Of a DNA stretch of 60,749 nucleotides, positions 4,805 to 54,379 are shown piece after piece. A program made the position numbers and the translations under genes. Numbering within the stretch: position 1 is the stretch's first letter; each line of letters starts with the position of its first letter. Below the pieces are notes generated by a model that saw only the letters and a list, made by a program, of their open reading frames with translations, did no database searches and was not told where the DNA came from. Origin of the DNA: Prasinococcaceae sp. CCMP 1430. Lineage: Eukaryota > Plantae > Prasinodermophyta. The stretch spans positions 25,323 to 86,071 of the forward strand of contig RQSC01000023.1 of assembly GCA_013416795.1 (NCBI GenBank), written 5' to 3'.

Positions 4805-6833
4805 CCTGCCTGCCTGCGTGAGGTCCGAGCCACACGTGGGGTGTGGCACGCTCGCCCCCCGGCGGCCGCCTCCGCCCCCGCGCCCGCGCGGCCACGAACT
4901 CCAGCCGCCGCCAGCCGCCGCCCCGTCGGTCGTCAACCGTCGCCCGTTTCGCCGCCGGCGCTTTCGGCGCGGCCGCCCGCCGCGACCTCGCGCCATTCCG
5001 AATGCGACACTCACTGCATGGTATGCTCGAAACCACGGTTCGTGCACATTTCCCCCCGGCGTCTGCGATTTCGAGTTCGAGGTGGCGCCGGCCGAATTCC
5101 AATCCCAAACATCCAAAGCAAATGCAGCAGTCTGAGTCTGTCTGCGCGTTTTGGCCGGCCCGGAAGGCCGGCCGCAGACCTGACTCACTCACTCATCCAT
5201 CGAAATGCTCTCCCGTGCGTCGATCAATCAATCGACGGGGCGAACGCCGGTTGGCTTCCGCCCCGACCGTTCGCTCGCTGCCAGTCTACGAACGGATCTG
5301 AAGCCGTTGATTGAATGATGGATGTATCCGGCCAGCCAGTGCCCGTCCGTCCGTGTCATCCTGCAATCCCGATCCGATCCTCGGTCGATCGTCGTGCTCC
5401 GCGCGCCAACCGCCGTCCGTCGTCGGCGCCGGCGGGGCTGGTGCGCGATGGGAGCCAGCCTCGCCCGCGCCCCCTCGCGCGCAGCCCGTCTCGTGACCGA
5501 CCGACTCGGCCTGAATGAATGTCAGCAGTGAATGTGAATGACAGCTGAGCGTACGTCATGGCTCGCCCGTGGGCACACACGCACACACTCAGTGCAGTAC
5601 TGATATGCGCGTGTGTGGGATTTGATTGGGCGTTTCGGTTTGCGCGCGCGCCTCCCTGCCTCGCTCCGCGGCGGCCACAGCGCGCGCGCGCGCGCGGCNN
5701 NNNNNNNNNNNNNNNNNNNNNNNNNNNNNNNNNNNNNNNNNNNNNNNNNNNNNNNNNNNNNNNNNNNNNNNNNNNNNGGCCGCTGCTGCCCGCTGCCGCC
5801 GCCCGCCGCCGCTGAGGCGGCACGCCAAGCTCGGGAGCGCGCGGGCCGCCGGCACGAAATTGCGCCCTCCGGAATTCGCCTCAAAAATCGAGGTCTATCG
5901 GACCCACGGGTGACCGATTCTTCGGGCGCTCTCGTTGTCGATGGCGGCGAGCGTTTTTGTTGTTGTTTTTGTTTGGGCGGCATTTATTTGAAAATGGCCG
6001 GCTGCGCGCGCCCAGGCGTGCGCGAGAGCGAGCGAGCGAGCGCGCGCGGGCGGGCGGCCCCGGCCGATGGCGGCGCGGACGCGCGCGCTCGGCGACGGAA
6101 GGTCGACGGGGCCGCCCTTGGAGAGGGCCTTCGCGCCACGCGCCGCAGTTGAGGGACACGTGAAGGGGGGGGGAGCACCGCGCGTGCTGCCCCCTCCCTG
6201 CCACTGTCCGATCGCGCTGCGCAGGCCTCTCTCTCTCTTTTTTTTTTTTGGCCGTTTGCTGCCGCGATTCGCGCGTCGCCGCCGCCTGCCGGCGGCTGAG
6301 GCCTGCAGCGACGCGCAGCGACGCCCAGGGGCGCGTTGCGCTCCGCTGCCGAGCTGCATCGCGCCCACGCTGCCAGGTCGTTGCGTACGCTCGCGAATTT
6401 GATGCGCGTGTGTGTGTGGCCGGGCGGATGTTTGCCGCGAGGGCGCGTGCAGCGGCGCGTGCTGCTGCACCAACGCCGCGCCGCGGACGCGCGCCTACTG
6501 CTGGCTCGCTTGTGCTGCCCGGCGGGCGGGCGGGGGGCATGCCTGATGCCGCCCTCGCCGGCGGACCTTCGCAGCAGCCGTCGCAGAAAAATTGTGCCGC
6601 GCGTGGTCGTACTCCCAGTTTTGAGCGTGCGAGCTCGCCCGCCCCATGGGTTGGCGGACGTGCGCCCCGCCGCAGCCCACGGGGTCGCATCGCAGTGGCC
6701 GAGCCGCCGGCGCCGCCGACGCCGAGCGGATGCACCATGGGCACCCAAGCGCGCTCGAATGCAAATGCGCAGCGACCACGGCGGCTGTGGCGTGTGCTGA
6801 CCCCCGCGCCGTGGACCTGCGCTGCACTCGCAG

Positions 6834-10086: not shown

Positions 10087-11526
10087 CTGCGGCGCAGGCA
10101 CGGGCTTCGGGGCGCGGCGCGAGGTGAGGCGCGGGCGCTGGGGTCGGTCAGTGGCTGGGGGCGCGGCGCAAATGGCGACTGCAACGTGCGTGGGGAAGGC
10201 ACGCGCGCGCGCGCGCCCTCCCCCTCCCCCCAACCACCCACCCATCCACCCCGCGCCGCCGCGGCGCATGGGCTGCCGCGGTCGCGGTGCCCCGCCACAT
10301 GGATCCAGCGCGCGCGCGAACACCCGCGCGGCCGCCGCCCAAAGAGCCGCAGCAGAGCCGCGCGCGGGAGCGAGGGGGAAGGATCCGCAAAGCGACCCGC
10401 CCCCCTTCGCTTGGCGCTGCAGCTCGGCGAGCGCGAGCACAGCCGATCCGAACCCACCGCCACCGCCTGCACGCGCGTCCGCCAAGCGCGGCGCAGCGGG
10501 AGCGCCGGCGAGCGGGCACGCGGCGGCGCGCGGCGCCGNNNNNNNNNNNNNNNNNNNNNNNNNNNNNNNNNNNNNNNNNNNNNNNNNNNNNNNNNNNNNN
10601 NNNNNNNNNNNNNNNNNNNNNNNNNNNNNNNNNNNNNNNNNNNNNNNNNNNNNNNNNNNNNNNNNNNNNNNNNNNNNNNNNNNNNNNNNNNNNNNNNNNN
10701 NNNNNNNNNNNNNNNNNNNNNNNNNNNNNNNNNNNNNNNNNNNNNNNNNNNNNNNNNNNNNNNNNNNNNNNNNNNNNNNNNNNNNNNNNNNNNNNNNNNN
10801 NNNNNNNNNNNNNNNNNNNNNNNNNNNNNNNNNNNNNNNNNNNNNNNNNNNNNNNNNNNNNNNNNNNNNNNNNNNNNNNNNNNNNNNNNNNNNNNNNNNN
10901 NNNNNNNNNNNNNNNNNNNNNNNNNNNNNNNNNNNNNNNNNNNNNNNNNNNNNNNNNNNNNNNNNNNNNNNNNNNNNNNNNNNNNNNNNNNNNNNNNNNN
11001 NNNNNNNNNNNNNNNNNNNNNNNNNNNNNNNNNNNNNNNNNNNNNNNNNNNNNNNNNNNNNNNNNNNNNNNNNNNNNNNNNNNNNNNNNNNNNNNNNNNN
11101 NNNNNNNNNNNNNNNNNNNNNNNNNNNNNNNNNNNNNNNNNNNNNNNNNNNNNNNNNNNNNNNNNNNNNNNNNNNNNNNNNNNNNNNNNNNNNNNNNNNN
11201 NNNNNNNNNNNNNNNNNNNNNNNNNNNNNNNNNNNNNNNNNNNNNNNNNNNNNNNNNNNNNNNNNNNNNNNNNNNNNNNNNNNNNNNNNNNNNNNNNNNN
11301 NNNNNNNNNNNNNNNNNNNNNNNNNNNNNNNNNNNNNNNNNNNNNNNNNNNNNNNNNNNNNNNNNNNNNNNNNNNNNNNNNNNNNNNNNNNNNNNNNNNN
11401 NNNNNNNNNNNNNNNNNNNNNNNNNNNCCGCGCCGGCGGGGCGGCCGCCGACCGCGGGGGCCGGCGCGCCGGTGGTGTGTGGTGTGCTCTTGGGAGCTTT
11501 ACAAATGAATGGCGCCCGCTCGCGCC

Positions 11527-12612: not shown

Positions 12613-13372
12613 NNNNNNNNNNNNNNNNNNNNNNNNNNNNNNNNNNNNNNNNNNNNNNNNNNNNNNNNNNNNNNNNNNNNNNNNNNNNNNNNNNNNNNNN
12701 NNNNNNNNNNNNNNNNNNNNNNNNNNNNNNNNNNNNNNNNNNNNNNNNNNNNNNNNNNNNNNNNNNNNNNNNNNNNNNNNNNNNNNNNNNNNNNNNNNNN
12801 NNNNNNNNNNNNNNNNNNNNNNNNNNNNNNNNNNNNNNNNNNNNNNNNNNNNNNNNNNNNNNNNNNNNNNNNNNNNNNNNNNNNNNNNNNNNNNNNNNNN
12901 NNNNNNNNNNNNNNNNNNNNNNNNNNNNNNNNNNNNNNNNNNNNNNNNNNNNNNNNNNNNNNNNNNNNNNNNNNNNNNNNNNNNNNNNNNNNNNNNNNNN
13001 NNNNNNNNNNNNNNNNNNNNNNNNNNNNNNNNNNNNNNNNNNNNNNNNNNNNNNNNNNNNNNNNNNNNNNNNNNNNNNNNNNNNNNNNNNNNNNNNNNNN
13101 NNNNNNNNNNNNNNNNNNNNNNNNNNNNNNNNNNNGGGGAGGGGGGAGGGGGGCGGGTGAGGGGTCGGAAGGCGTCCTGCTGGTGAGGAGGGCCGCAGGG
13201 CACCCCGGAAACCGGGGCGGGGGGGAGGGAGGCGTGGCGAGGCGGGGACTGAACGCTCCGCGAGGAACGAAGTCGCCAGTTCGGCGCGCCGGCGCCCCTC
13301 GGGCGCCGGGGCGCCCGCGCCCGCGGGCCCAGTAGAGCGTGAGCGCGCGGAGCGCGCCCCCTCGACGCGGCC

Positions 13373-15435: not shown

Positions 15436-17886
15436 TCAGATTGCGGCCGTGAGTGCCCTGGCCTGCTCCACCCGCGCTACGCTCCTGAGGTGCCGCGCGC
15501 GCAACGACCGGAGCTGCATGGTGAGGAGGTCGGTGGACACCTGCGCGATGATGTCCCTCTCGGCAGCCACGAGCGCAGCCAGGCGCTGCCTGGCGCGTTC
15601 AGATTTGTCGTCGGTGCGGTTGGTGCGCACGCCACTGCGCAGTGCCGCCGCGCTGATGTTTTCAGGGTGGCCCTGCGAGGCGCCAGAGTCAGACACTGCG
15701 CGCAGCGTGTCCTGGCCGCCCGACACGAACGACGGGATGTGCAAAGATGCGCGCGCGTAAGGACCCACGCCGCTGTCATAGAGAAGGTGATACCACTCGT
15801 CCACGGTCGCACCAGTTGGAAGCAATCCTGCCTGCACCGCCCGGTCGACTCCGGCGGCCGATCCCGCCCCAGCATGCGGCGACGAGTGCACGGTCTCCGC
15901 GCGTGCCCCCGCTGCGGTGCGCGAGCCTCGCCGCGCCGCCGTCGGCGACAGTGGAGGCGCCTGTTGCTGGTGATGGTGGTGGTATCCGCGCTGCTGCGCG
16001 GGAGCGTCCGTGAGCTCGGGTGCGTTGATGCGCGCGGCCGTAATGCCTGGGACACCACCGGCCCCTCCGGGGCCTATCATCAAAGGCGAAGCTGGCACGT
16101 CTTGCAGTGGAGACGAAACGACCGTCGCCTCTGCAGCTGGTGGCACAGGGAACGCGAAGGCATTCTCGCCGTCCGAGCCGTCGCTGTGTGTTTCCGCCTC
16201 CGGGCGATCATTCAGCGCCCCTGCGAACTCTCCATCGCGCACTGAAAGCTCGTCGGAAACACTCTCCTCGAGGAAGGTGCTCCCGCATGCGCTGCTGCGG
16301 CGGCCGCTGTCGAAGCTGCTGTTGAGGGAGTCATCGGCGGACGCGCTGCCGCTGCCTCCGATGGGTCGCTGCACAGCCGCAAAGCCCCCCGCACTGCCGT
16401 CATTGTCGCTGTCGTTCTTGACCTTGAAGACGGGTTCCATCGCGAGCATACTGCCGAAGGCGGACATTGTCTCGACATCGTCCGCGCCCACTCTGTCAGA
16501 GAGAGGCTCAGACACAACGCTCTCCTCTCTGAAGGATTCTTCAGGTATGGACTCGACGACTGTTCCATCATTCTCAGAGACAGCGTCGTCCACATGCGCC
16601 TGATGGCCGGCGTCTCCACCGATGGACCCACCGCCAAGAAGCTCGGCGGTGTGACCGCTGCTCGAATCGTCGGCATCGCCCACATCCGTACGCGCGTTCG
16701 CACCAGCGCCCATGATCGCAGCAGGCGTGGCGTTGCCACCGAGCATCGCGTGCAGCTCAGCGGTCGCACGCGCAGCATCGTCTACCTCGTCGGGAATTTC
16801 CTCCTCGATGGGTTGTGTGCTCTCCGCTGGACCGCCGACCGACGTGAGCGTTGCGTGCAGGGCGGCAGTGGCAGCCTCGGCCTCGACCATCGCGTGGTCT
16901 TTCGCGGCAGCGACCGCAGCGACAGGCGCGGACTTTGGCGGCGAAGCCACGATCGCATCAGAGGCTGCGCGCCCACTGAGCATCGCATGCAGCTCAGCGG
17001 TGGCGCGCTCTGCAGAGGCGGCAGCGTCGGCGCCGCCCTCGCCGTCGCTCTCGCCGAATCCGCGACCCTGGAAGACTATCTGTTCGCTCAGCATGGCATG
17101 GAGAGCATCCGTCGCGCGCTGCGCATCGTCCGCCTCCGCAGACGCCGCCTGCTGGCCTGCAGGGCGCCCCTCCCCCCTCACTTGCTGCTGCTGTGGCTGC
17201 CGAGGGCGCGCGTGCCGATGCTGTTTTTGTTGCCCCATGCTCTGCTGCGTTTCTGTGCGCTCTGTGCCCTGCCGCTCTGCCTCTGACGACCGCACGCGCG
17301 CCGACTCGCGCTTTGTAGAGGTGCGCCCGCTGTCTTCTCGCGCCTCTTCCTTGGATTGGCTGGTGCCCTCGGCCCCGCTGGCAATGGCTTCTCTTCTGCC
17401 CCTCGGAGATGGCGAGGGTGAGAGTGAGCTTGGCGGGGATGGCGAGGACGAGAGCGAGGGCCCGGACGGCGCGTCTTGCCTGCCCCGCTGTCGCAGGCCC
17501 CTCGCGCTCGCCGGGCGGCCGGTGCGGCGGCCTGATCTGGCGGGGCCGCCGGTCGCGCTACCGCTGTACCGAGAGAGCAGCTCGTCCGCCCTGGACATGG
17601 CTGATGCGTCACCCCCGAGCGCCCGCGGCTGGTTCATAGCGCGCTGGCGCGCCGCGCCGCCGAACATCGCCTCTGCGAAGCTTGGCTGCTCAGGCGGACC
17701 GTCGTATGAGTACGGCGGCGGCGCGTCGTACTGCTGATACTCGCCGTACGGTTCGTCGTACGATTCCCCGTACTGCTCGTACTCCACGCCTGCTTCGGGC
17801 GCGTGGTAGGTAGCCCCCGCGACCCCCCCCGCCGCCTCGTAGAATGCCGCCTCGTCGGCGTAGTAGTCGTCGTCCTCGTCGAGCAC
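15436..17886 (-). CDS. Hypothetical low-complexity protein with 4 internal helical repeats and a C-terminal coiled coil
   Basis: 816-codon ORF with an acidic/Tyr-rich N-terminus, a repeated AxRATxxLHAML motif and a C-terminal amphipathic helix. The start probably lies in an upstream exon. Confidence 0.65.
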   Translation of the reverse strand: MLDEDDDYYADEAAFYEAAGGVAGATYHAPEAGVEYEQYGESYDEPYGEYQQYDAPPPYSYDGPPEQPSFAEAMFGGAARQRAMNQPRALGGDASAMSRADELLSRYSGSATGGPARSGRRTGRPASARGLRQRGRQDAPSGPSLSSSPSPPSSLSPSPSPRGRREAIASGAEGTSQSKEEAREDSGRTSTKRESARVRSSEAERQGTERTETQQSMGQQKQHRHARPRQPQQQQVRGEGRPAGQQAASAEADDAQRATDALHAMLSEQIVFQGRGFGESDGEGGADAAASAERATAELHAMLSGRAASDAIVASPPKSAPVAAVAAAKDHAMVEAEAATAALHATLTSVGGPAESTQPIEEEIPDEVDDAARATAELHAMLGGNATPAAIMGAGANARTDVGDADDSSSGHTAELLGGGSIGGDAGHQAHVDDAVSENDGTVVESIPEESFREESVVSEPLSDRVGADDVETMSAFGSMLAMEPVFKVKNDSDNDGSAGGFAAVQRPIGGSGSASADDSLNSSFDSGRRSSACGSTFLEESVSDELSVRDGEFAGALNDRPEAETHSDGSDGENAFAFPVPPAAEATVVSSPLQDVPASPLMIGPGGAGGVPGITAARINAPELTDAPAQQRGYHHHHQQQAPPLSPTAARRGSRTAAGARAETVHSSPHAGAGSAAGVDRAVQAGLLPTGATVDEWYHLLYDSGVGPYARASLHIPSFVSGGQDTLRAVSDSGASQGHPENISAAALRSGVRTNRTDDKSERARQRLAALVAAERDIIAQVSTDLLTMQLRSLRARHLRSVARVEQARALTAAI

Positions 17887-18041
17887 GCCCCCCCCGCCCC
17901 ACGGCGGGCCTCACCCACCTGCAAGTAAAACGCATGCGCTCATTCCCGCGCGCGCGCTCGGCAAAGTGGAGAACTACTGCACGCATCGAGTAATAATTCA
18001 TGAGATCAATGTAGGAATGGTGGCGCGTCGATCGACCGCGC

Positions 18042-20564
18042 CTACGCTTTGTGGGACCACCATGCCTCGACCGCGGCACTCCTCGCGGCGGGGTGCGCCA
18101 TGCCCGCTGCCTTGTTGTCACGGTACTTGCGGGTCGCCTTCTTAGCCTGCCGCAGCCACTCCTCCCAGGGCAGCGCTCCGGACGGGACGTCGCACGCGCC
18201 ATTGGCGGATGTGTGCTCACCGTAGTCGCGCAGCAGGGTGCGGAAGTAACACGAGGTAGCTGCGGGCGTCATATACCGATGCACGTACGCGTTGGCGCTG
18301 CGCACCACGCGCAGCGCGCTGCTGTGCGACGCCTCCGATCTGCGCACAGCAGCCGTCAAATTGCCAAAAGCTGCGTCCACAGGTATGAAGTGCACGTTCG
18401 GCTGGAGGTCAGAGTACCAGAACTCGCGGTACGGGGACGCCTGGACCATCACCGCGCTCGAAGAGGCGAGCAGCATTTTCAGGCGGTCGGCGCATCCTAC
18501 GCCATCAGCACTGAGGATGTACCTGTATCGCTCCACCTGCGCCGACATCGTCATGGACGCGTTCTTGCCAGCCACGCGAAGGCCCAACTCCTCAACCCAC
18601 CTGCGCGGCGCACCAGCGCACCATATCTCGCGTCGACCCATGCAAGGCGCGCCATCAGGAACGCCCGTGAGCTCCACGTCGACCAGCGAGCGATCTGACG
18701 GCCCCATGGACTGCTGACGGCGCTTGAGATGGGCACGGTCCTCCGCCGAGAGCGCGCCACGGAAGGCGACCTGACCGCGCTTGCTATCCCACAGCCGCGT
18801 GAGCTCCGCATCCGGGTCGCCAAGGCCGCGCGACCAATGCAAGTCCTCGCGAGGATGATAGGGCCGCGGGATGCTCACCCCATACATCCGGGCTGTGCGC
18901 GAGGTCATGCACGAGCTGAACAAGGGCACGTGCGTGGTCTCGTCCCACTTCCGAAGCTGCTCCGCGAAGGCGAGACTGGTGACGATGAAGCTTGTGCTGC
19001 GCTGCGGCCGCTCGGCGCCCTCCACATCCGCACCGCTCGCGCCGTCTCTGCCACCGCACGAGTCGGTCTGGAGCGCTCCACTCAGCGTCTTGCACAAACC
19101 TGTCATGTAGTTGAGCGTGAAGTCATCGACCAAGTCCCCACGCACGTACACCTCCCCCTTGTCAGTCACATGCACCAGCGCCGCCTTCCTCTGCCACTCG
19201 TTGCCTTGGGCGATGAAGTAGCGATATTGCTCGTGTACGTGATCACACTTCAGGCACCCATGCACGCTCTCGAGCGCCTCTGTCACGTGCGCCTCCGCCC
19301 ATGCTCCCAGAGGCTCCGTGCCGGCCATGCGCCGCGCGCGCGCCTCCTTGGCGAGCGCAGCTGCGTGCTCGGCCTCCCGTCTGCTCTTTGCTTTGCCCTT
19401 TTGAGCCCGCGACGGGCATTGATCAAGCGACGCGTCGGCCCAGTACACCACCTCATCGGCACCGCCACTATCTTGCCGAGGCAGCGCCGCTATGCAAAGG
19501 ATGAGTGTGGACGCCAACGCAATGGGCCTGGAAGGACGCACGAACGCGCTACGCCGTCGCTGTTGCGCCTGACCATCTTGCGGACTGCCAGGCCGCACCG
19601 TGCGTAGCTGGGCCTTCGATGGGTGTGCGAAGCGCTTCTCGGAGCTGTACGCTGCGACGCCAAGCACAGTAGCCGCGTATCCTAAAGCTCCTGACCGGGT
19701 GATCGGGTTACGGAAGACAGCCACCGACACCGCCGCGCCCACCGCACCCTTTGCGTTGCCCAAGACCTGGAGAGTGAGCGCACCCAGGCACTTGGTCACC
19801 AGAAAGTTGCTCAGGTTCACCAGGTACGCCGTGCAGCCGCTGAGCAGCAGCAGCCCGCCGAGCCACGGCCCGGCATCGCCTCGCGTGAGGAGGAAGGATA
19901 CCAGCTCGGCCCCCTCGGCAAGCGCAGCTGCGGGAACCAGCACACCCGCTGCAATGGGCGACATGAAGCGCAGCAGATTCTGCGAGTCGATGCCGTCGTC
20001 TCCCGCCAGCAGCACGGCCTGCAACACGCTCTTGAGGGCACGTGTGGCCGTCGCGGCGAGAGCGGCGACAAGGCCCACGAAGTTGAGCGCTGGCTCGGCC
20101 TGCACTCCGACAGCGACGCCGGCAACGACAGGCACGAGCATGAGGTACGTGGCGAGCGTCTCGACGCGCCGTTGGATGGCGTAGCTGATGATCGCGGTGA
20201 AAAAGGGCGTCGTTGCGCCCACCGCCTGGCTGAAGCTGGCCGGGATGTAACGTAGACTCACGTTGCCCGCCGTGACGCTAGCGCAAAACACGAGGGCGAG
20301 CACACCGACCTTGCCGGCCTGCTTGCGGTCGCGCAGCTTCACGGGCTGCGCCAGTCGAAGCACGTTGATATTCAGCCAGCTCAGCCCAGAGCATGAGAGC
20401 ATATGTAGCGCGGTCAGAGAGATGGGGAAGCGAAAGCCATGGCTCGAGAGCAGTACCTTGTTAAGCAAGAGCACGCCGACGCTCGACGTGTACCACACGC
20501 TGACAGCTGCGGCCGTTGCACCCCATCCGGGCGCCGGGGTGGCGCGGCTTGCGGCGCCGGCCAT
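18042..20564 (-). CDS. Fusion: TPT-family nucleotide-sugar transporter + membrane anchor + GT90/CAP10-type glycosyltransferase
   Basis: N-terminal part: VWYTSSVGVLLLNK, FRFPISLTALHM, GNVSLRYIPASFSQAVGATTPFFTA, LTLQVLGNAKGAV (plant At3g11320/UUAT-type). C-terminal part: WDSKRGQVAFRGA, RYRYILSADGVGCADRLKMLL, YREFWYSDLQPNVHFIPV (Glyco_transf_90). One uninterrupted 840-aa frame. Confidence 0.85.
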   Translation of the reverse strand: MAGAASRATPAPGWGATAAAVSVWYTSSVGVLLLNKVLLSSHGFRFPISLTALHMLSCSGLSWLNINVLRLAQPVKLRDRKQAGKVGVLALVFCASVTAGNVSLRYIPASFSQAVGATTPFFTAIISYAIQRRVETLATYLMLVPVVAGVAVGVQAEPALNFVGLVAALAATATRALKSVLQAVLLAGDDGIDSQNLLRFMSPIAAGVLVPAAALAEGAELVSFLLTRGDAGPWLGGLLLLSGCTAYLVNLSNFLVTKCLGALTLQVLGNAKGAVGAAVSVAVFRNPITRSGALGYAATVLGVAAYSSEKRFAHPSKAQLRTVRPGSPQDGQAQQRRRSAFVRPSRPIALASTLILCIAALPRQDSGGADEVVYWADASLDQCPSRAQKGKAKSRREAEHAAALAKEARARRMAGTEPLGAWAEAHVTEALESVHGCLKCDHVHEQYRYFIAQGNEWQRKAALVHVTDKGEVYVRGDLVDDFTLNYMTGLCKTLSGALQTDSCGGRDGASGADVEGAERPQRSTSFIVTSLAFAEQLRKWDETTHVPLFSSCMTSRTARMYGVSIPRPYHPREDLHWSRGLGDPDAELTRLWDSKRGQVAFRGALSAEDRAHLKRRQQSMGPSDRSLVDVELTGVPDGAPCMGRREIWCAGAPRRWVEELGLRVAGKNASMTMSAQVERYRYILSADGVGCADRLKMLLASSSAVMVQASPYREFWYSDLQPNVHFIPVDAAFGNLTAAVRRSEASHSSALRVVRSANAYVHRYMTPAATSCYFRTLLRDYGEHTSANGACDVPSGALPWEEWLRQAKKATRKYRDNKAAGMAHPAARSAAVEAWWSHKA

Positions 20565-21329
20565 CCGGCCGGCAAGCGCAGCGCCCCGCGGCCCACGTGT
20601 GCGCCTGCTCGCGCCGCCCCTACTGTGGGGGCCAGAGCGTGGCGCGGCAGCGGCGCGGCTCCCAGCCGCCCCCCAGCCGCGCGCGCCGTGTGCCCCCCAC
20701 CCGCCAACACCCGCACACTCACGCACATGCGGCGCCGCGCGCGCGCGCGCCGGCGTTTCGAAGCCATTTTCCACAGGCGAATTTCCCGCCGTTGTTACCC
20801 CGCCTCCGCCCGCGCGCGCGCCGCGCGATACCAGTGGGCGCACGTCGCGCAAAAATGGCCGAAATAAAAAAGAAAGGAGAACATCCAATGCGAAATGATA
20901 TATGCGCGTTTTATTCATGAGTACAGTAAAAATAAAAATAAAAATGGGGCCGGGTGCGGGTTGCGGATCGCGGGTTCGCGACGGCGCGTCCTTCGGAATT
21001 GGCGCCGCGCGAATTGCGCGCCGGTCCGCGCGAACGCGGCGCGCGCCCTTTGGTTTCCGGTGGGCGCTCGCGGGGATGGGTGCGGGCTCCGCGGGTGAAA
21101 ACGGCTCCAAAAAATGCGCGGCGGGCGCGGCCCGCGGCCGGGAACGAACGGCAATTGCGGTTCAGGAGGGCAGGGTCTGTGAGAGGACTAAGGCCAGCCA
21201 GTTGGCCTCCAACGGCGGGCGACCTCAGAGCATCCTCGCGGGGTCCTCGCCCGCCTTGAGGCGCTTCAGGAAGCTGCCGGTGGGGTCGACGGCGGCTGCG
21301 CGCGCACGGGGTGGGATTGGCGGAGCGCG

Positions 21330-23041: not shown

Positions 23042-23268
23042 NNNNNNNNNNNNNNNNNNNNNNNNNNNNNNNNNNNNNNNNNNNNNNNNNNNNNNNNNNN
23101 NNNNNNNNNNNNNNNNNNNNNNNNNNNNNNNNNNNNNNNNNNNNNNNNNNNNNNNNNNNNNNNNNNNNNNNNNNNNNNNNNNNNNNNNNNNNNNNNNNNN
23201 NNNNNNNNNNNNNNNNNNNNNNNNNNNNNNNNNNNNNNNNNNNNNNNNNNNNNNNNNNNNNNNNNNNN

Positions 23269-40078: not shown

Positions 40079-41889
40079 GGCGGGATGCGAGGAGGGCCTG
40101 CGGCGTTCGTGCGTTGGTGGTGGTCGTTGGGGTGGTGCGTGGGTGGGTGGGTGGGTGGGTGTGGAGGGGAGCGAGTAGGGGCGAGGAAGTTGTCAGCGCG
40201 GGCCGCGAGCGCTCGCAGCCAGCGAGCGCTTGTTGGTGGCGGCGATGGAGGTGCGCGGCGTGGGGCGGGGGCGGGTAGCGTGGGCGGCTCGCAGCCGGCG
40301 ACTCCTGCAGGAGCGGCTGCTGAGCGGACGGGAGCAGCACTGCGCAGCGCGGCGCAGTGCTGCGCAGAGCGCCCGCCCGCCTCGCGAATGCAGCGCGCCC
40401 GCCCCGCAATCGCGCCCCCTTTCCATGCCCGCCCCCCCTCCCTCGCTCGCGGCAAGCCCTCTCGCGCGCCGCAAGGGCGCGCCGCGCCCGCGGCGTCCGC
40501 GGNNNNNNNNNNNNNNNNNNNNNNNNNNNNNNNNNNNNNNNNNNNNNNNNNNNNNNNNNNNNNNNNNNNNNNNNNNNNNNNNNNNNNNNNNNNNNNNNNN
40601 NNNNNNNNNNNNNNNNNNNNNNNNNNNNNNNNNNNNNNNNNNNNNNNNNNNNNNNNNNNNNNNNNNNNNNNNNNNNNNNNNNNNNNNNNNNNNNNNNNNN
40701 NNNNNNNNNNNNNNNNNNNNNNNNNNNNNNNNNNNNNNNNNNNNNNNNNNNNNNNNNNNNNNNNNNNNNNNNNNNNNNNNNNNNNNNNNNNNNNNNNNNN
40801 NNNNNNNNNNNNNNNNNNNNNNNNNNNNNNNNNNNNNNNNNNNNNNNNNNNNNNNNNNNNNNNNNNNNNNNNNNNNNNNNNNNNNNNNNNNNNNNNNNNN
40901 NNNNNNNNNNNNNNNNNNNNNNNNNNNNNNNNNNNNNNNNNNNNNNNNNNNNNNNNNNNNNNNNNNNNNNNNNNNNNNNNNNNNNNNNNNNNNNNNNNNN
41001 NNNNNNNNNNNNNNNNNNNNNNNNNNNNNNNNNNGGCATTTCGGGCGCGCGTTCCGCGAACGTCGCGCGCGCGCCAAGACCCCGCGCGGATAGACGCCGG
41101 GGGGTCGCGCGCGCGCGCGCGCGCGCATGAACGCAGCGTGCGCGCTGCTCAGGGGGGGGTGCGGCCGTCCCGGACGGGGCAGATGCCGTCCATCACAACG
41201 AAGGCGACGCGACCCGGCCCCGACCCCCCGAGAAGATCCCGCAACAGACGCGCCGGCGCCGGGTTTTGGCGCGCGGCTGCGGCGGGGCGCGACGTGGCGC
41301 GGACGGTGCGGAGGCGCGCGACGAGCGAGCGCGCGCGCGCGCGGACTCGGATCTTGGCTGGGTGTGTGCGTGCCCCGCGGCTGGTCCGGTCCGGTCTGGC
41401 TGGGGGGAAGCAAAATTGGCCTGGCTCTGCGGCGGTGACCGCCCGTCACGCGAGAGGTCAGAGCGGCGCGGGCGCCCCTGCCAACGACCCGCAAAACGCG
41501 TCGCCACGCCCCCCACTTCCACCGCCGCCAGGCCGCGCGCGCGCAACACGCACGCACGCACTCAGTCAGTCAGCGACGACGGACCGAACGACGAGGTTTG
41601 AGAGGCGGACGAAGCGCCGGCCGGCTGGGATGTTTCCCATGCAGGGGAGAGAGGGAGGGCGCGCGCGGGCAGGCAGGCAGGAGAAGAGCAGCAGCGCATG
41701 AGTCAGTCAGGCAGGGCATCATCGCGGCGACGACCAACAACAAAAGACGGGACCGCCAGCCACAGCGAGAAACAGCTGGGCTTGCAGCCCGGCGCCTCCG
41801 TCGGTCGGTCGGTCGGTCAATCGGGATGCCTCGTCGGATGCATCGCCCCCTTCCTCCCTGCGCTTCCCAGCCAGCCATAACAGACACAA

Positions 41890-53221: not shown

Positions 53222-54379
53222 GCAGGGACGTGCGTGGCCAACGCGCTTGCTAAACAGACGTAGGAGGAGCTCGCGCGCACGACTGCCACTCTTCTTAGCT
53301 TGACGCGTGCCGGCCGCCGCGCGCAGCCGCGGCGGCGGCTGCCGCCCGCGGCAGGGTTCATACTTTTTTTAAAATCAAAATAAGGACAGTCCGATAAATA
53401 ACCGTCCCGTCGCGTCGAGCGACGCGTTCAATGTGATGGCGTTTTGATCGGCGCGAAACGCACAAAAAAAAACATCCCCCGGTAACCGCCGGCACTATCA
53501 CAATAACCGCCGGGCGCTGAGCGGGGCACGGTAGTTGTTTCAACCGCAGCGTCCACAGCCACGTGGCCTCAACATGTACGTTATTTTGTGTCCGTTGTTT
53601 TTGTTTCATACGTCAAAAGCCTCTTGGAACGCCCGCGGCACCAGATATTTCGAGGCCGCGAGGAACATTGGTTCCGAGGAGGCGGAGAGGCACACGACAG
53701 GTCAGCCGCGTGACTATGCTGCGGGTGTGACGCGGCCCGAGTTTCGGCGACTGCTTGCGGAAAAAGCGCCGGAAGCTCCGCCGCGCGCGCGCGCGCGGCG
53801 CCGCGACGCCGCGCGCCCGGAATGCGAGTTGATGGGGGCGGCAGGCTTCCGCTTCGCGGACGCGTCCGCGAAACGAGCGCGTCGTTTGGGCCGACCGCCT
53901 CCGGATCCGTCGACGTCGCATGTTTTTGACCTGCCCTCATCCCCATCTACGTAGAAGCATAAAACACCTCACACGTACCCACGGTGTAGTCCTACCGCGC
54001 GTCGCGGTCGTCCGCGCCCGGGGGCCGCTTCCGTCCGTCGAGCGGCGAGCGGCGAGCGGCTGCGGCGGCGCGNNNNNNNNNNNNNNNNNNNNNNNNNNNN
54101 NNNNNNNNNNNNNNNNNNNNNNNNNNNNNNNNNNNNNNNNNNNNNNNNNNNNNNNNNNNNNNNNNNNNNNNNGATTTTGCCCTCCTCCTGCGTCCAGCAG
54201 CGCATCGCGTCAGCCGACCTACCTCCCTCCCTCCCTCTCTCGCGCCCCACACCGCCATGGCACGAACGAGGCCGCCAATCAACACAGACACGAACGCAGC
54301 GGAGAGGCCCTTTTCGACATTGATAAAACAACATAATAGACGTTTGGAAAAACCACGGGCGACACTGTGGACCCTGGGC

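What the first reader, a model, noticed from the sequence alone, without database searches (positions are those of the whole stretch)
18042..20564. Nucleotide-sugar transporter fused in frame to a GT90 glycosyltransferase
One stop-free 840-aa frame encodes a complete plant-type TPT/NST domain, a basic linker, an extra hydrophobic helix (PIALASTLILCIAAL) and a GT90/CAP10 domain. No Met lies between the transporter and that helix, so a separate second gene is unlikely. NSTs typically have 10 TMs with a cytosolic C-terminus, so the extra helix would act as a type-II anchor placing the GT domain in the Golgi/ER lumen. That would be a self-supplying transporter-transferase able to channel its donor (GT90s use UDP-Xyl or UDP-Glc). 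I know of no described fusion of this kind.
Basis: partly seen in the sequence, partly recalled or inferred. Interest (0 to 1): 0.78.

Follow-up and report, generated by a model that had tools for sequence, protein, structure and literature searches.

The report
Sugar-nucleotide transporter fused to glycosyltransferase
The marine green alga Prasinoderma coloniale has a real, expressed gene that joins a Golgi-type nucleotide-sugar importer to a sugar-adding enzyme in one protein chain, an arrangement I found in no other organism or paper searched. It would be a natural example of a transporter wired directly to the enzyme it may feed.

Summary
Window 18042-20564 (minus strand) is one 840-codon stop-free frame with a complete TPT-family transporter (aa 19-307) and a GT90 glycosyltransferase domain. 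The window is Prasinoderma coloniale.

The fusion is not an assembly or frame artefact:
- Six wild haplotypes from independent Tara and Logan assemblies keep the same 840-aa frame without indel or stop.
- The public gene model contains it at 100% identity.
- Contigs from RNA or probable RNA libraries run collinear with the genome across the linker, with no splice joint.

Anatomy:
- The transporter has 10 helices and is about 50% identical to plant UUAT1-like UDP-sugar transporters.
- A basic linker follows, then the most hydrophobic segment of the protein (aa 348-362; flank charges +6 and -4), then a charged stem.
- The last part is a full GT-B domain with the POGLUT1/2 fold.
- The closest relatives of the enzyme half (36-47% identity) are stand-alone type II membrane proteins whose anchor sits where helix 11 sits.

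Both phosphate-binding arginines are kept. The canonical catalytic Asp is Ala, with a clade-conserved Glu-Gln three residues on.

No other TPT+GT90 protein appeared in any search. Substrate, activity and channelling are untested. The gene's flanks in this assembly disagree with the wild copies and are probably mis-joined. The scan had not noted this fusion before.

The parts
18042..20564 (-). Whole coding sequence of the fusion: 840 codons plus the stop at 18042-18044. No intron.
   Evidence: Identical to aa 210-1049 of the public model P0028. The same 840-aa frame is present in six wild haplotypes. RNA-derived contigs are collinear with it and show no joints.
19644..20510 (-). TPT / nucleotide-sugar transporter domain, aa 19-307, ten transmembrane helices.
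   Evidence: Pfam PF03151, E 6.9e-38, full model length. It aligns to the end of the 10-helix Galdieria translocator 5Y78. The AF2 model shows ten helices between aa 14 and 313. It is 49-53% identical to plant proteins named UDP-URONIC ACID TRANSPORTER 1 or At3g11320-like.
19530..19643 (-). Basic linker, aa 308-345. No Met. Inferred to be cytosolic.
   Evidence: Net charge +6 over aa 316-345. No sequence variant in six wild haplotypes. AF2 pLDDT below 50.
19479..19529 (-). Helix 11, the putative type II signal anchor. Hydrophobic core at aa 348-362.
   Evidence: It is the most hydrophobic segment of the whole protein on an approximate Hessa scale (-0.1 kcal/mol), within the range of the relatives' anchors. 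The following 20 residues carry a net charge of -4. It is a helix in the GT-only AF2 model but not in the full-length model.
19317..19478 (-). Charged stem, aa 363-416, ending at Met413.
   Evidence: A helix at aa 391-413 appears in both AF2 models. Homology to stand-alone relatives begins at aa 415-418.
18150..19316 (-). GT90 catalytic domain with a GT-B fold, aa 417-805.
   Evidence: AF2 model with pLDDT 84.7 and pTM 0.82. Foldseek matches POGLUT2 (E 2.4e-16) and POGLUT1 (E 1.9e-15, TM 0.74 by target). The family profile matches POGLUT2 at E 2.5e-76 and POGLUT1 at 8.7e-63.
18960..18971 (-). Codons for aa 532-535. Ala532 stands at the position of the POGLUT1 catalytic base Asp133. Glu535 is conserved in the clade and is followed by Gln536.
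   Evidence: Alignment columns. Asp133 is named as the catalytic base in PMC5543122.
18735..18737 (-). Arg610, the equivalent of POGLUT1 Arg218 (binds the donor phosphates).
   Evidence: Invariant column in 39 sequences. Position mapped. Role taken from PMC5543122.
18483..18485 (-). Arg694, the equivalent of POGLUT1 Arg279 (binds the donor phosphates). The preceding Asp693 stands where POGLUT1 has the sugar-stacking Phe278.
17884..20659 (-). Block of 2,776 bases (the gene plus about 95 nt 5' and about 158 nt 3') shared at 99.6% identity with wild copies. Outside it, the window's flanks match neither the wild copies nor the public gene model.

Best explanation
This is a genuine single-exon gene of Prasinoderma coloniale that encodes one polypeptide with two working parts.

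Shown:
- The open frame is reproduced in independent wild assemblies and in the public model.
- It is collinear with contigs from RNA or probable RNA libraries across the linker.
- The N-terminal part is a complete 10-helix TPT-family transporter, closest to plant UUAT1-like UDP-sugar transporters.
- The C-terminal part has a complete POGLUT-like GT-B fold, with both phosphate-binding arginines kept.

Inferred:
- The transporter's two ends face the cytosol, as in other nucleotide-sugar transporters.
- The arginine-rich linker stays in the cytosol.
- Helix 11 (aa 348-362) crosses the membrane once, like the type II anchor of the stand-alone relatives.
- A stem of about 55 residues therefore holds the GT90 domain in the Golgi or ER lumen, next to the transporter's luminal mouth.
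- The transporter imports a UDP-sugar in exchange for UMP, and the tethered enzyme uses that donor on a luminal acceptor. UDP is released where it can be converted to the UMP that drives further import.

The most likely origin is the joining of a transporter gene to a downstream type II GT90 gene, with loss of the transporter's stop codon and the enzyme's start codon. The enzyme belongs to a divergent green-algal and environmental GT90 clade that has Ala at the canonical base position and a conserved Glu-Gln one turn later. It probably uses a shifted catalytic base. Its donor sugar is unknown.
For: Frame and domains.

Organism and public model: P0028 (PRCOL_00000257-RA) is 100% identical over all 840 aa.

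Independent copies:
- Tara metagenome scaffolds from five samples and one Logan assembly give six haplotypes, all 840 aa, with 8-18 amino-acid changes and no indel or stop.
- None of the 32 variant codons lies in the linker, where 4.2 were expected (Poisson P about 0.016).

RNA:
- Run X1, whose RNA status is a guess, has contigs of even depth (7.6-10.4) covering 18128-20376. This includes 19351-19604 and 19576-19901 across the linker.
- Metatranscriptome contigs cover 19134-19409 and 19322-19476.
- No joints and no indels were reported.

Transporter:
- It aligns to the C-terminal end of the 10-helix structure 5Y78.
- AF2 shows ten helices.
- The best named relatives are UUAT1-like, at 49-53% identity.

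Anchor:
- The closest GT relatives (47, 41 and 39% identity) are 408-462 aa proteins with a basic N-terminus and one hydrophobic anchor, followed by homology that starts at fusion aa 415-418.
- Helix 11 is the most hydrophobic segment of the protein, with flank charges of +6 and -4.

Enzyme:
- AF2 pLDDT is 84.7.
- The fold matches POGLUT1 and POGLUT2, and the family profile matches POGLUT2 at E 2.5e-76.
- The equivalents of Arg218 and Arg279 are conserved.
Against: - The canonical catalytic Asp133 is Ala532, so activity cannot be assumed.
- Among wild variants the GT half shows 19 non-synonymous against 3 synonymous changes (pN/pS about 2, not significantly different from neutral, p 0.33). Polymorphism therefore gives no proof of purifying selection on that half. 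The changes do cluster in the N-terminal subdomain and the C-terminal tail rather than in the donor-binding core.
- The full-length AF2 model gives no confident structure for aa 309-402, and helix 11 is not helical there.
- Codon-position GC bias is weaker in the linker (GC3 0.70, GC2 0.60) than in the domains (0.79 and 0.51).
- The RNA evidence consists of assembled contigs, not single reads spanning both domains, and the RNA status of run X1 is a guess.
- The fusion is seen only in one very narrow lineage (at least 98% identity).
Confidence: 0.7

Rival explanations
1. The gene is a precursor, not a working fusion. It is translated as one chain but cut in the linker or stem, as many Golgi glycosyltransferases are clipped in their stems. 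The transporter and the enzyme would then act as separate proteins, and the fusion would serve only co-expression and co-targeting.
For: The linker and stem are disordered and rich in di- and tri-basic sites (the RRR and SRR runs; pLDDT below 50). The stand-alone relatives work without a transporter.
Against: Nothing here shows cleavage. The linker is invariant in six haplotypes. Cleavage after helix 11 would still leave the fusion needed for targeting.
Confidence: 0.12
2. The GT90 domain is catalytically dead. It would serve as a luminal sugar- or nucleotide-binding module that regulates or localises the transporter, so the protein is a decorated transporter and not a bifunctional enzyme.
For: The catalytic base Asp133 is replaced by Ala532. 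The wild variants show an excess of non-synonymous changes in the GT half.
Against: The same Ala substitution, with a conserved Glu-Gln three residues later, is shared by most stand-alone type II relatives in this clade, which have no other obvious role. Both phosphate-binding arginines and the FRG and P-x-x-H motifs are invariant or nearly so. The wild variants mostly avoid the donor-binding core: aa 573-794 has 2 non-synonymous and 3 synonymous changes.
Confidence: 0.13
3. There are two separate genes, or the fusion is an assembly artefact. Under this reading the in-frame join comes from a stop-poor GC-rich spacer, a sequencing indel or a mis-join in an error-prone assembly.
For: A stop-free 109-codon spacer has roughly a 7% chance at this base composition (my estimate). 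The linker has a weak codon signature. This assembly does have wrong joins right next to the gene and, according to earlier notes, elsewhere.
Against: Six independent wild assemblies and the public model give the identical join without indels. RNA-derived contigs cross it. The transporter has no stop codon of its own. The enzyme has no Met before its anchor.
Confidence: 0.04

Closest known systems
Arabidopsis UUAT1 (At5g04160) and its paralogues At3g11320, At5g05820 and At3g10290: Golgi UDP-uronic-acid / UDP-sugar transporters of the TPT (DMT) family
   Same: The identity is 49-53% over the whole transporter half. It has the same Pfam TPT domain, ten helices, and the Lys-Gly motif where plastid translocators have Lys-Arg (alignment). 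According to PMC5790919, UUAT1 is Golgi-localised and carries UDP-GlcA and UDP-GalA.
   Different: The plant proteins are 305-335 aa and end after helix 10. This one continues for 530 more residues. The substrate cannot be read from homology in this family, as PMC5790919 itself warns.
GT90 enzymes with solved structures: human POGLUT1 (5L0R), POGLUT2 (9W47) and Drosophila Rumi (5F84)
   Same: It has the same GT-B fold (Foldseek E 1e-13 to 1e-16). The profile match covers both Rossmann halves. Arg218 and Arg279 are conserved.
   Different: The identity is only 16-19%. The catalytic Asp133 is Ala, and Phe278 is Asp. There is no KDEL-type retrieval signal, and the domain is membrane-tethered instead. 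POGLUTs are soluble ER enzymes that modify EGF repeats, and nothing suggests that acceptor here.
Stand-alone type II GT90 proteins from marine metagenomes (P0035/P0184, P0036, P0037)
   Same: They are 36-47% identical over aa 415-809. Most share the active-site motif with Ala at the base position, and all share the later Glu-Gln. They also have a basic tail followed by a single anchor before the catalytic domain.
   Different: They have no transporter domain, and none is encoded within 0.5-5.7 kb upstream on their contigs. They lack the 55-residue stem.
Non-covalent transporter-transferase assemblies, for example SLC35A3 with the MGAT enzymes
   Same: They reflect the same functional idea: the nucleotide-sugar transporter is physically coupled to the transferase that uses its cargo (PMC6453868 and PMC9368800, listed).
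   Different: Those are separate proteins that associate with each other. Here the link is a peptide bond. I found no paper describing a natural covalent fusion.

Membership tests
TPT / DMT nucleotide-sugar transporter (Pfam PF03151) | Full-length match to the family model above the curated cut-off | tested here: met
   131 bits against a cut-off of 30, model positions 5-291 of 291.
TPT / DMT nucleotide-sugar transporter (Pfam PF03151) | [quoted passage not shown] | tested here: met
   Ten helices at aa 14-313 in the AF2 model. The alignment reaches residue 318 of 329 of the 10-helix structure 5Y78. Which side faces the cytosol is inferred.
TPT / DMT nucleotide-sugar transporter (Pfam PF03151) | Nucleotide-sugar type rather than plastid phosphate-translocator type: Lys kept, and the adjacent Arg of the plastid Lys-Arg pair absent | tested here: met
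   In the alignment, the query's Lys-Gly lies opposite the Lys-Arg of 5Y78. The nearest named relatives are UUAT1-like. The subgroup rule itself is recalled from the literature and was not tested.
TPT / DMT nucleotide-sugar transporter (Pfam PF03151) | Antiport of a nucleotide sugar against a nucleoside monophosphate | not testable with these tools
   This needs proteoliposome assays.
GT90 (CAP10 / POGLUT, Pfam PF05686) | Match to the family model above the curated cut-off | tested here: met
   64.3 bits against a cut-off of 24, but covering only model positions 154-326 of 396. The clade profile matches POGLUT2 and POGLUT1 over both halves.
GT90 (CAP10 / POGLUT, Pfam PF05686) | GT-B fold like POGLUT1 | tested here: met
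   AF2 pLDDT 84.7. Foldseek against 5L0R gives E 1.9e-15, TM 0.74 by target, over 392 columns.
GT90 (CAP10 / POGLUT, Pfam PF05686) | Two arginines that hold the donor's phosphates (POGLUT1 Arg218 and Arg279) | tested here: met
   Arg610 is invariant and Arg694 is conserved in at least 90% of 39 sequences. Positions mapped. Roles taken from PMC5543122.
GT90 (CAP10 / POGLUT, Pfam PF05686) | Catalytic base Asp at the POGLUT1 Asp133 position | tested here: not met
   The residue is Ala532. The closest relatives mostly have Ala there as well, with a conserved Glu/Asp-Gln three residues on. More distant GT90s keep the Asp. I therefore file it as a divergent GT90 clade, with activity unproven.
GT90 (CAP10 / POGLUT, Pfam PF05686) | Catalytic domain in the lumen of the secretory pathway | tested here: inconclusive
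   This is inferred from the even helix count, the flank charges of +6 and -4 around helix 11, two sequons and 11 cysteines in the C-terminal part, and the type II anchors of the relatives. No topology predictor or experiment was available.
Natural covalent transporter-glycosyltransferase fusion (no described family) | The same architecture present in other organisms | tested here: not met
   Only the Prasinoderma cluster carries PF03151 plus PF05686 in two word-index searches.
Among the best 150 of 1,403 GT-half relatives from 1.84 billion representatives, the ten long enough to hold a transporter have none.
The Atlas fold search shows none, and a JGI metagenome scan found nothing.
Hits ranked 151-1403, and other transporter or GT families, were not examined.

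The most novel reading that the evidence does not exclude
This is the first natural protein in which a Golgi nucleotide-sugar transporter is covalently tethered to the luminal glycosyltransferase that consumes its cargo, so that import, transfer and by-product recycling happen within a few nanometres. If so, it acts as a Rosetta stone. The cargo of this UUAT1-like transporter clade would be the donor of an orphan GT90 clade that has moved its catalytic base.
Probability: 0.45. Interest if true: 0.72.

Novelty: new variant of a known kind. Interest (0 to 1): 0.62.

Why it matters
How Golgi transferases obtain enough donor is an open question. Current evidence rests on weak, non-covalent contacts between transporters and transferases. 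A natural covalent fusion would be direct evolutionary evidence that close coupling pays off.

It would also give a simple test system: compare the fused and split versions. It offers a design template for glyco-engineering. By the logic of gene fusion, it predicts which donor an uncharacterised GT90 clade uses and what a UUAT1-like algal transporter carries.

It also bears on the unknown chemistry of the thick Prasinoderma cell wall. The genome paper found none of the usual plant wall synthases (PMC7455551).

Tried and rejected
- **Exact look-up.** The 840-aa protein is not in the collection, because the public model is 1049 aa.
- **ESM Atlas search by features.** No usable hit.
- **JGI metagenome scan for relatives of the fusion.** 136 pattern matches, none real.
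- **Ancestral gene neighbourhood.**
  - The contigs of the closest stand-alone GT90 relatives carry no transporter.
  - The closest stand-alone transporter (P0201, 61% identity) has no called GT90 gene on its contigs.
  - So no ancestral neighbour arrangement was found.
- **First full-length alignment (A3).** It was mis-aligned, with the GT homologues spread over the transporter region, and I did not use it. A trimmed set (A4) was acceptable, but the resulting full-length model is weak (pLDDT 68.7) and uninformative for the linker.
- **Retro-copy idea for the transcript-sized conserved block.** I found no poly(A) tract or target-site duplication at the boundaries. A mis-join in this assembly is the simpler reading.
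- **Selection from polymorphism.** There are too few variants to be conclusive.
- **Papers.** Four searches for a described transporter-transferase fusion found none.
Full report
**1. The observation**

On the minus strand, 18042-20564 reads as 840 codons and a stop, with no internal stop. Pfam finds two domains:
- TPT at aa 19-307, E 6.9e-38, covering positions 5-291 of the 291-position model.
- Glyco_transf_90 at aa 591-788, E 1.2e-17, 64 bits against a cut-off of 24.

The window is about 68% G+C, so long open frames are cheap. By my estimate a 109-codon spacer stays open about 7% of the time. The other two frames of the linker carry only 1 and 4 stops. The open frame alone therefore proves little, and I looked for independent evidence.

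No Met lies between the transporter and the helix, but a Met (M413) lies after the helix.

**2. Organism and public model**

A 99%-identical, 840-aa protein cluster (P0001) came up in the word search. Its members include the EukProt entry EP00793_Prasinoderma_coloniale_P004496, PRCOL_00000257-RA (P0028, 1049 aa). Residues 210-1049 of P0028 are 100% identical to the window's protein.

**3. Is the join real?**

Three lines of evidence say it is.

(a) *Independent assemblies.* Five Tara metagenome scaffolds and one Logan assembly give six haplotypes (L001, L002, L007-L010). All are 840 aa, with 8-18 amino-acid differences from the window and no indel or stop. The 32 distinct variant codons fall as follows:

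| Region | Variant codons |
|---|---|
| Transporter | 10 |
| Linker (aa 308-416) | 0 |
| Enzyme | 22 |

About 4.2 were expected in the linker (Poisson P about 0.016).

(b) *The public annotation* spans both domains.

(c) *RNA.* One run of the organism (X1) is only guessed to be RNA. It holds 11 Mb of contigs, and its depth is confined to the gene. It has contigs of even depth (7.6-10.4) over 18128-20376, including 19351-19604 and 19576-19901 across the linker. Two marine metatranscriptomes add 19134-19409 and 19322-19476, plus pieces of both halves. No joints, indels or stops were reported.

These are assembled contigs, not single molecules, so a full-length cDNA read is still the decisive test.

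**4. The transporter half**

- It aligns to the very end of the 10-helix Galdieria translocator structure 5Y78.
- AF2 gives ten helices between aa 14 and 313.
- The best named relatives are plant proteins annotated UDP-URONIC ACID TRANSPORTER 1 or At3g11320 / At5g05820 / At3g10290-like, at 49-53% identity over about 90% of the query.
- Where plastid translocators have Lys-Arg, this protein has Lys-Gly.
- UUAT1 is a Golgi transporter of UDP-GlcA and UDP-GalA. The same paper warns that homology predicts substrate poorly in this family (PMC5790919).
- The nearest stand-alone relative (P0201, 61% identity, 315 aa) sits in a compact marine picoeukaryote genome, and none of the genes called on its contigs is a GT90.

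**5. Linker and helix 11**

- Residues 316-345 carry a net charge of +6.
That is more favourable than any of the ten transporter helices, and within the range of the relatives' anchors.
- The next 20 residues carry a net charge of -4.
- This is the positive-inside pattern of an N-in, C-out anchor.
- The C-terminal part has two N-glycosylation sequons (Asn668, Asn735) and 11 cysteines.
- AF2 models helix 11 as a helix in the GT-only run, but gives no confident structure for aa 309-402 in the full-length run.
- The codon signature of the linker is weaker than that of the domains. That fits a disordered Arg/Pro/Ala-rich segment or a recently recruited spacer.

**6. The enzyme half**

An exhaustive HMMER search with aa 331-840 against 1.84 billion representatives gave 1,403 hits. 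After the Prasinoderma cluster itself, the best are P0035 (47% identity, 449 aa), P0036 (41%, 417 aa) and P0037 (39%, 408 aa). All come from metagenomes.

Each of these has a basic N-terminus and one hydrophobic anchor, followed by homology that begins at fusion residues 415-418. Helix 11 therefore plays the role of their type II anchor. The fusion adds a stem of about 55 residues.

Their contigs carry no transporter upstream.

With a 39-sequence alignment, AF2 gives pLDDT 84.7 and pTM 0.82. Foldseek finds POGLUT2, POGLUT1 and Rumi first, at E 2.4e-16 to 2.4e-13, with TM 0.74 by target for 5L0R. The clade profile matches POGLUT2 at E 2.5e-76 and POGLUT1 at 8.7e-63, over both halves of the fold.

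**7. Active site**

In POGLUT1, Asp133 is the catalytic base. Arg218 and Arg279 hold the donor's phosphates, and Phe278 stacks on the sugar (PMC5543122). Mapping these through the profile alignment and the family alignment gives:

| POGLUT1 residue | Role | Here | Conservation |
|---|---|---|---|
| Arg218 | binds donor phosphates | Arg610 | invariant in 39 sequences |
| Arg279 | binds donor phosphates | Arg694 | at least 90% |
| Phe278 | stacks on the sugar | Asp693 | not assessed |
| Asp133 | catalytic base | Ala532 | Ala in most close relatives |

The closest relatives mostly share the Ala and have a conserved Glu/Asp-Gln three residues later (Glu535-Gln536 here). More distant GT90s keep the Asp. 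I read this as a divergent clade with a shifted base, but that is an inference. The donor sugar cannot be named.

**8. Selection**

- pN/pS is about 0.57 in the transporter and about 2 in the enzyme. Neither differs significantly from neutral.
- The enzyme's non-synonymous variants cluster in the N-terminal, acceptor-side subdomain (aa 454-572; 9 non-synonymous, 0 synonymous) and in the C-terminal tail (aa 795-838; 7 non-synonymous, 0 synonymous).
- The donor-binding core (aa 573-794) has 2 non-synonymous and 3 synonymous changes.
- This is suggestive only.

**9. Is the architecture known?**

- Only the Prasinoderma cluster shows PF03151 plus PF05686 in the two word-index searches.
- Among the best 150 GT-half relatives, the ten long enough to hold a transporter carry none. 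Three of them join GT90 to a sulfatase, a GT47 domain or a PLOD-GT domain, and six show GT90 alone.
- The Atlas fold search shows GT90 with filamin or GT34, not with a transporter.
- A JGI metagenome scan found nothing.
- Four paper searches found studies of non-covalent transporter-transferase complexes (PMC6453868, PMC9368800) but no covalent fusion.
- The genome paper reports 83 glycosyltransferases and a KYU-HAAO fusion, but not this one.

Limits: hits ranked 151-1403 and other transporter or GT families were not examined, and no InterPro architecture search was possible.

**10. Flanks**

The 2,776-base block 17884-20659 is 99.6% identical to the wild scaffolds, but both flanks differ completely.

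The first 178 residues of the public model are encoded nowhere in this 60-kb window. They are encoded in the wild scaffold L008, just upstream of the gene. The wild copies and the public annotation therefore agree with each other and disagree with this assembly.

Earlier notes on this genome report other mis-joins and missing terminal exons. I treated those as leads. I consider a mis-join at the G/C-rich boundaries the likeliest cause, and a second genomic copy is the alternative.

This does not affect the fusion itself. It does show that the 209-residue N-terminal extension of the public model is probably spurious:
- The Pfam model and all homologues start at the ATG at 20564.
- In L008 the extension overlaps a Swi3 gene on the other strand.

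**11. Verdict**

This is a real, expressed, lineage-restricted fusion of a UUAT1-like nucleotide-sugar transporter to a type II GT90 enzyme. As far as I could search it is undescribed.

The mechanism of import followed by immediate luminal use is well motivated but untested. The missing canonical base is the main caveat.

Noticed in passing
window 17884 and 20659 (both edges of the gene block); L008 7925-8550 and 11230 onward: Outside a 2,776-base block that is 99.6% identical to wild Tara copies, both flanks of the gene in this assembly are unrelated to the wild scaffolds. The public gene model follows the wild context, not the window. The likely cause is a mis-join at G/C-rich low-complexity boundaries. 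A second genomic copy is possible.
   Followed up: partly
window 20565-20657 and the public model P0028 aa 1-209: The public 1049-aa model carries a 209-residue low-complexity N-terminal extension. Of this, 178 residues are not encoded in this window. In L008 the extension overlaps a Swi3 gene on the opposite strand. The real start is most likely the ATG at 20564.
   Followed up: partly
window 18969-18971 and 18957-18962 (aa 532, 535-536); alignment A2: A green-algal and environmental GT90 clade has replaced the canonical catalytic Asp with Ala and carries a conserved Glu/Asp-Gln three residues later. One member, P0035, has both the Asp and the Glu.
   Followed up: partly
window 18045-19316 (aa 417-840) across L001, L007-L010: The wild amino-acid variants cluster in the acceptor-side N-terminal subdomain (aa 454-572) and the C-terminal tail (aa 795-838). 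No variant at all occurs in aa 217-453, and no amino-acid change in aa 167-453. The numbers are too small for a formal test.
   Followed up: partly
P0085, P0127, P0115; Atlas row 3: Elsewhere GT90 domains are fused to other luminal enzymes: a sulfatase, a GT47 exostosin domain, a PLOD-type GT domain, and GT34 in chlorophytes. None is fused to a transporter.
   Followed up: no
window 5699-5777, 10539-11427, 12613-13135, 23042-23268, 40503-41034, 54073-54172 and four single N: The window is a gapped scaffold. The low-GC bins at 10-14 kb and 40-42 kb in the composition profile are N runs, not real composition shifts.
   Followed up: yes
L005 1900-3066: A stand-alone relative of the enzyme half lies next to a gene with a faint sulfotransferase hit. 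This is a possible hint of sulfated-glycan synthesis.
   Followed up: no
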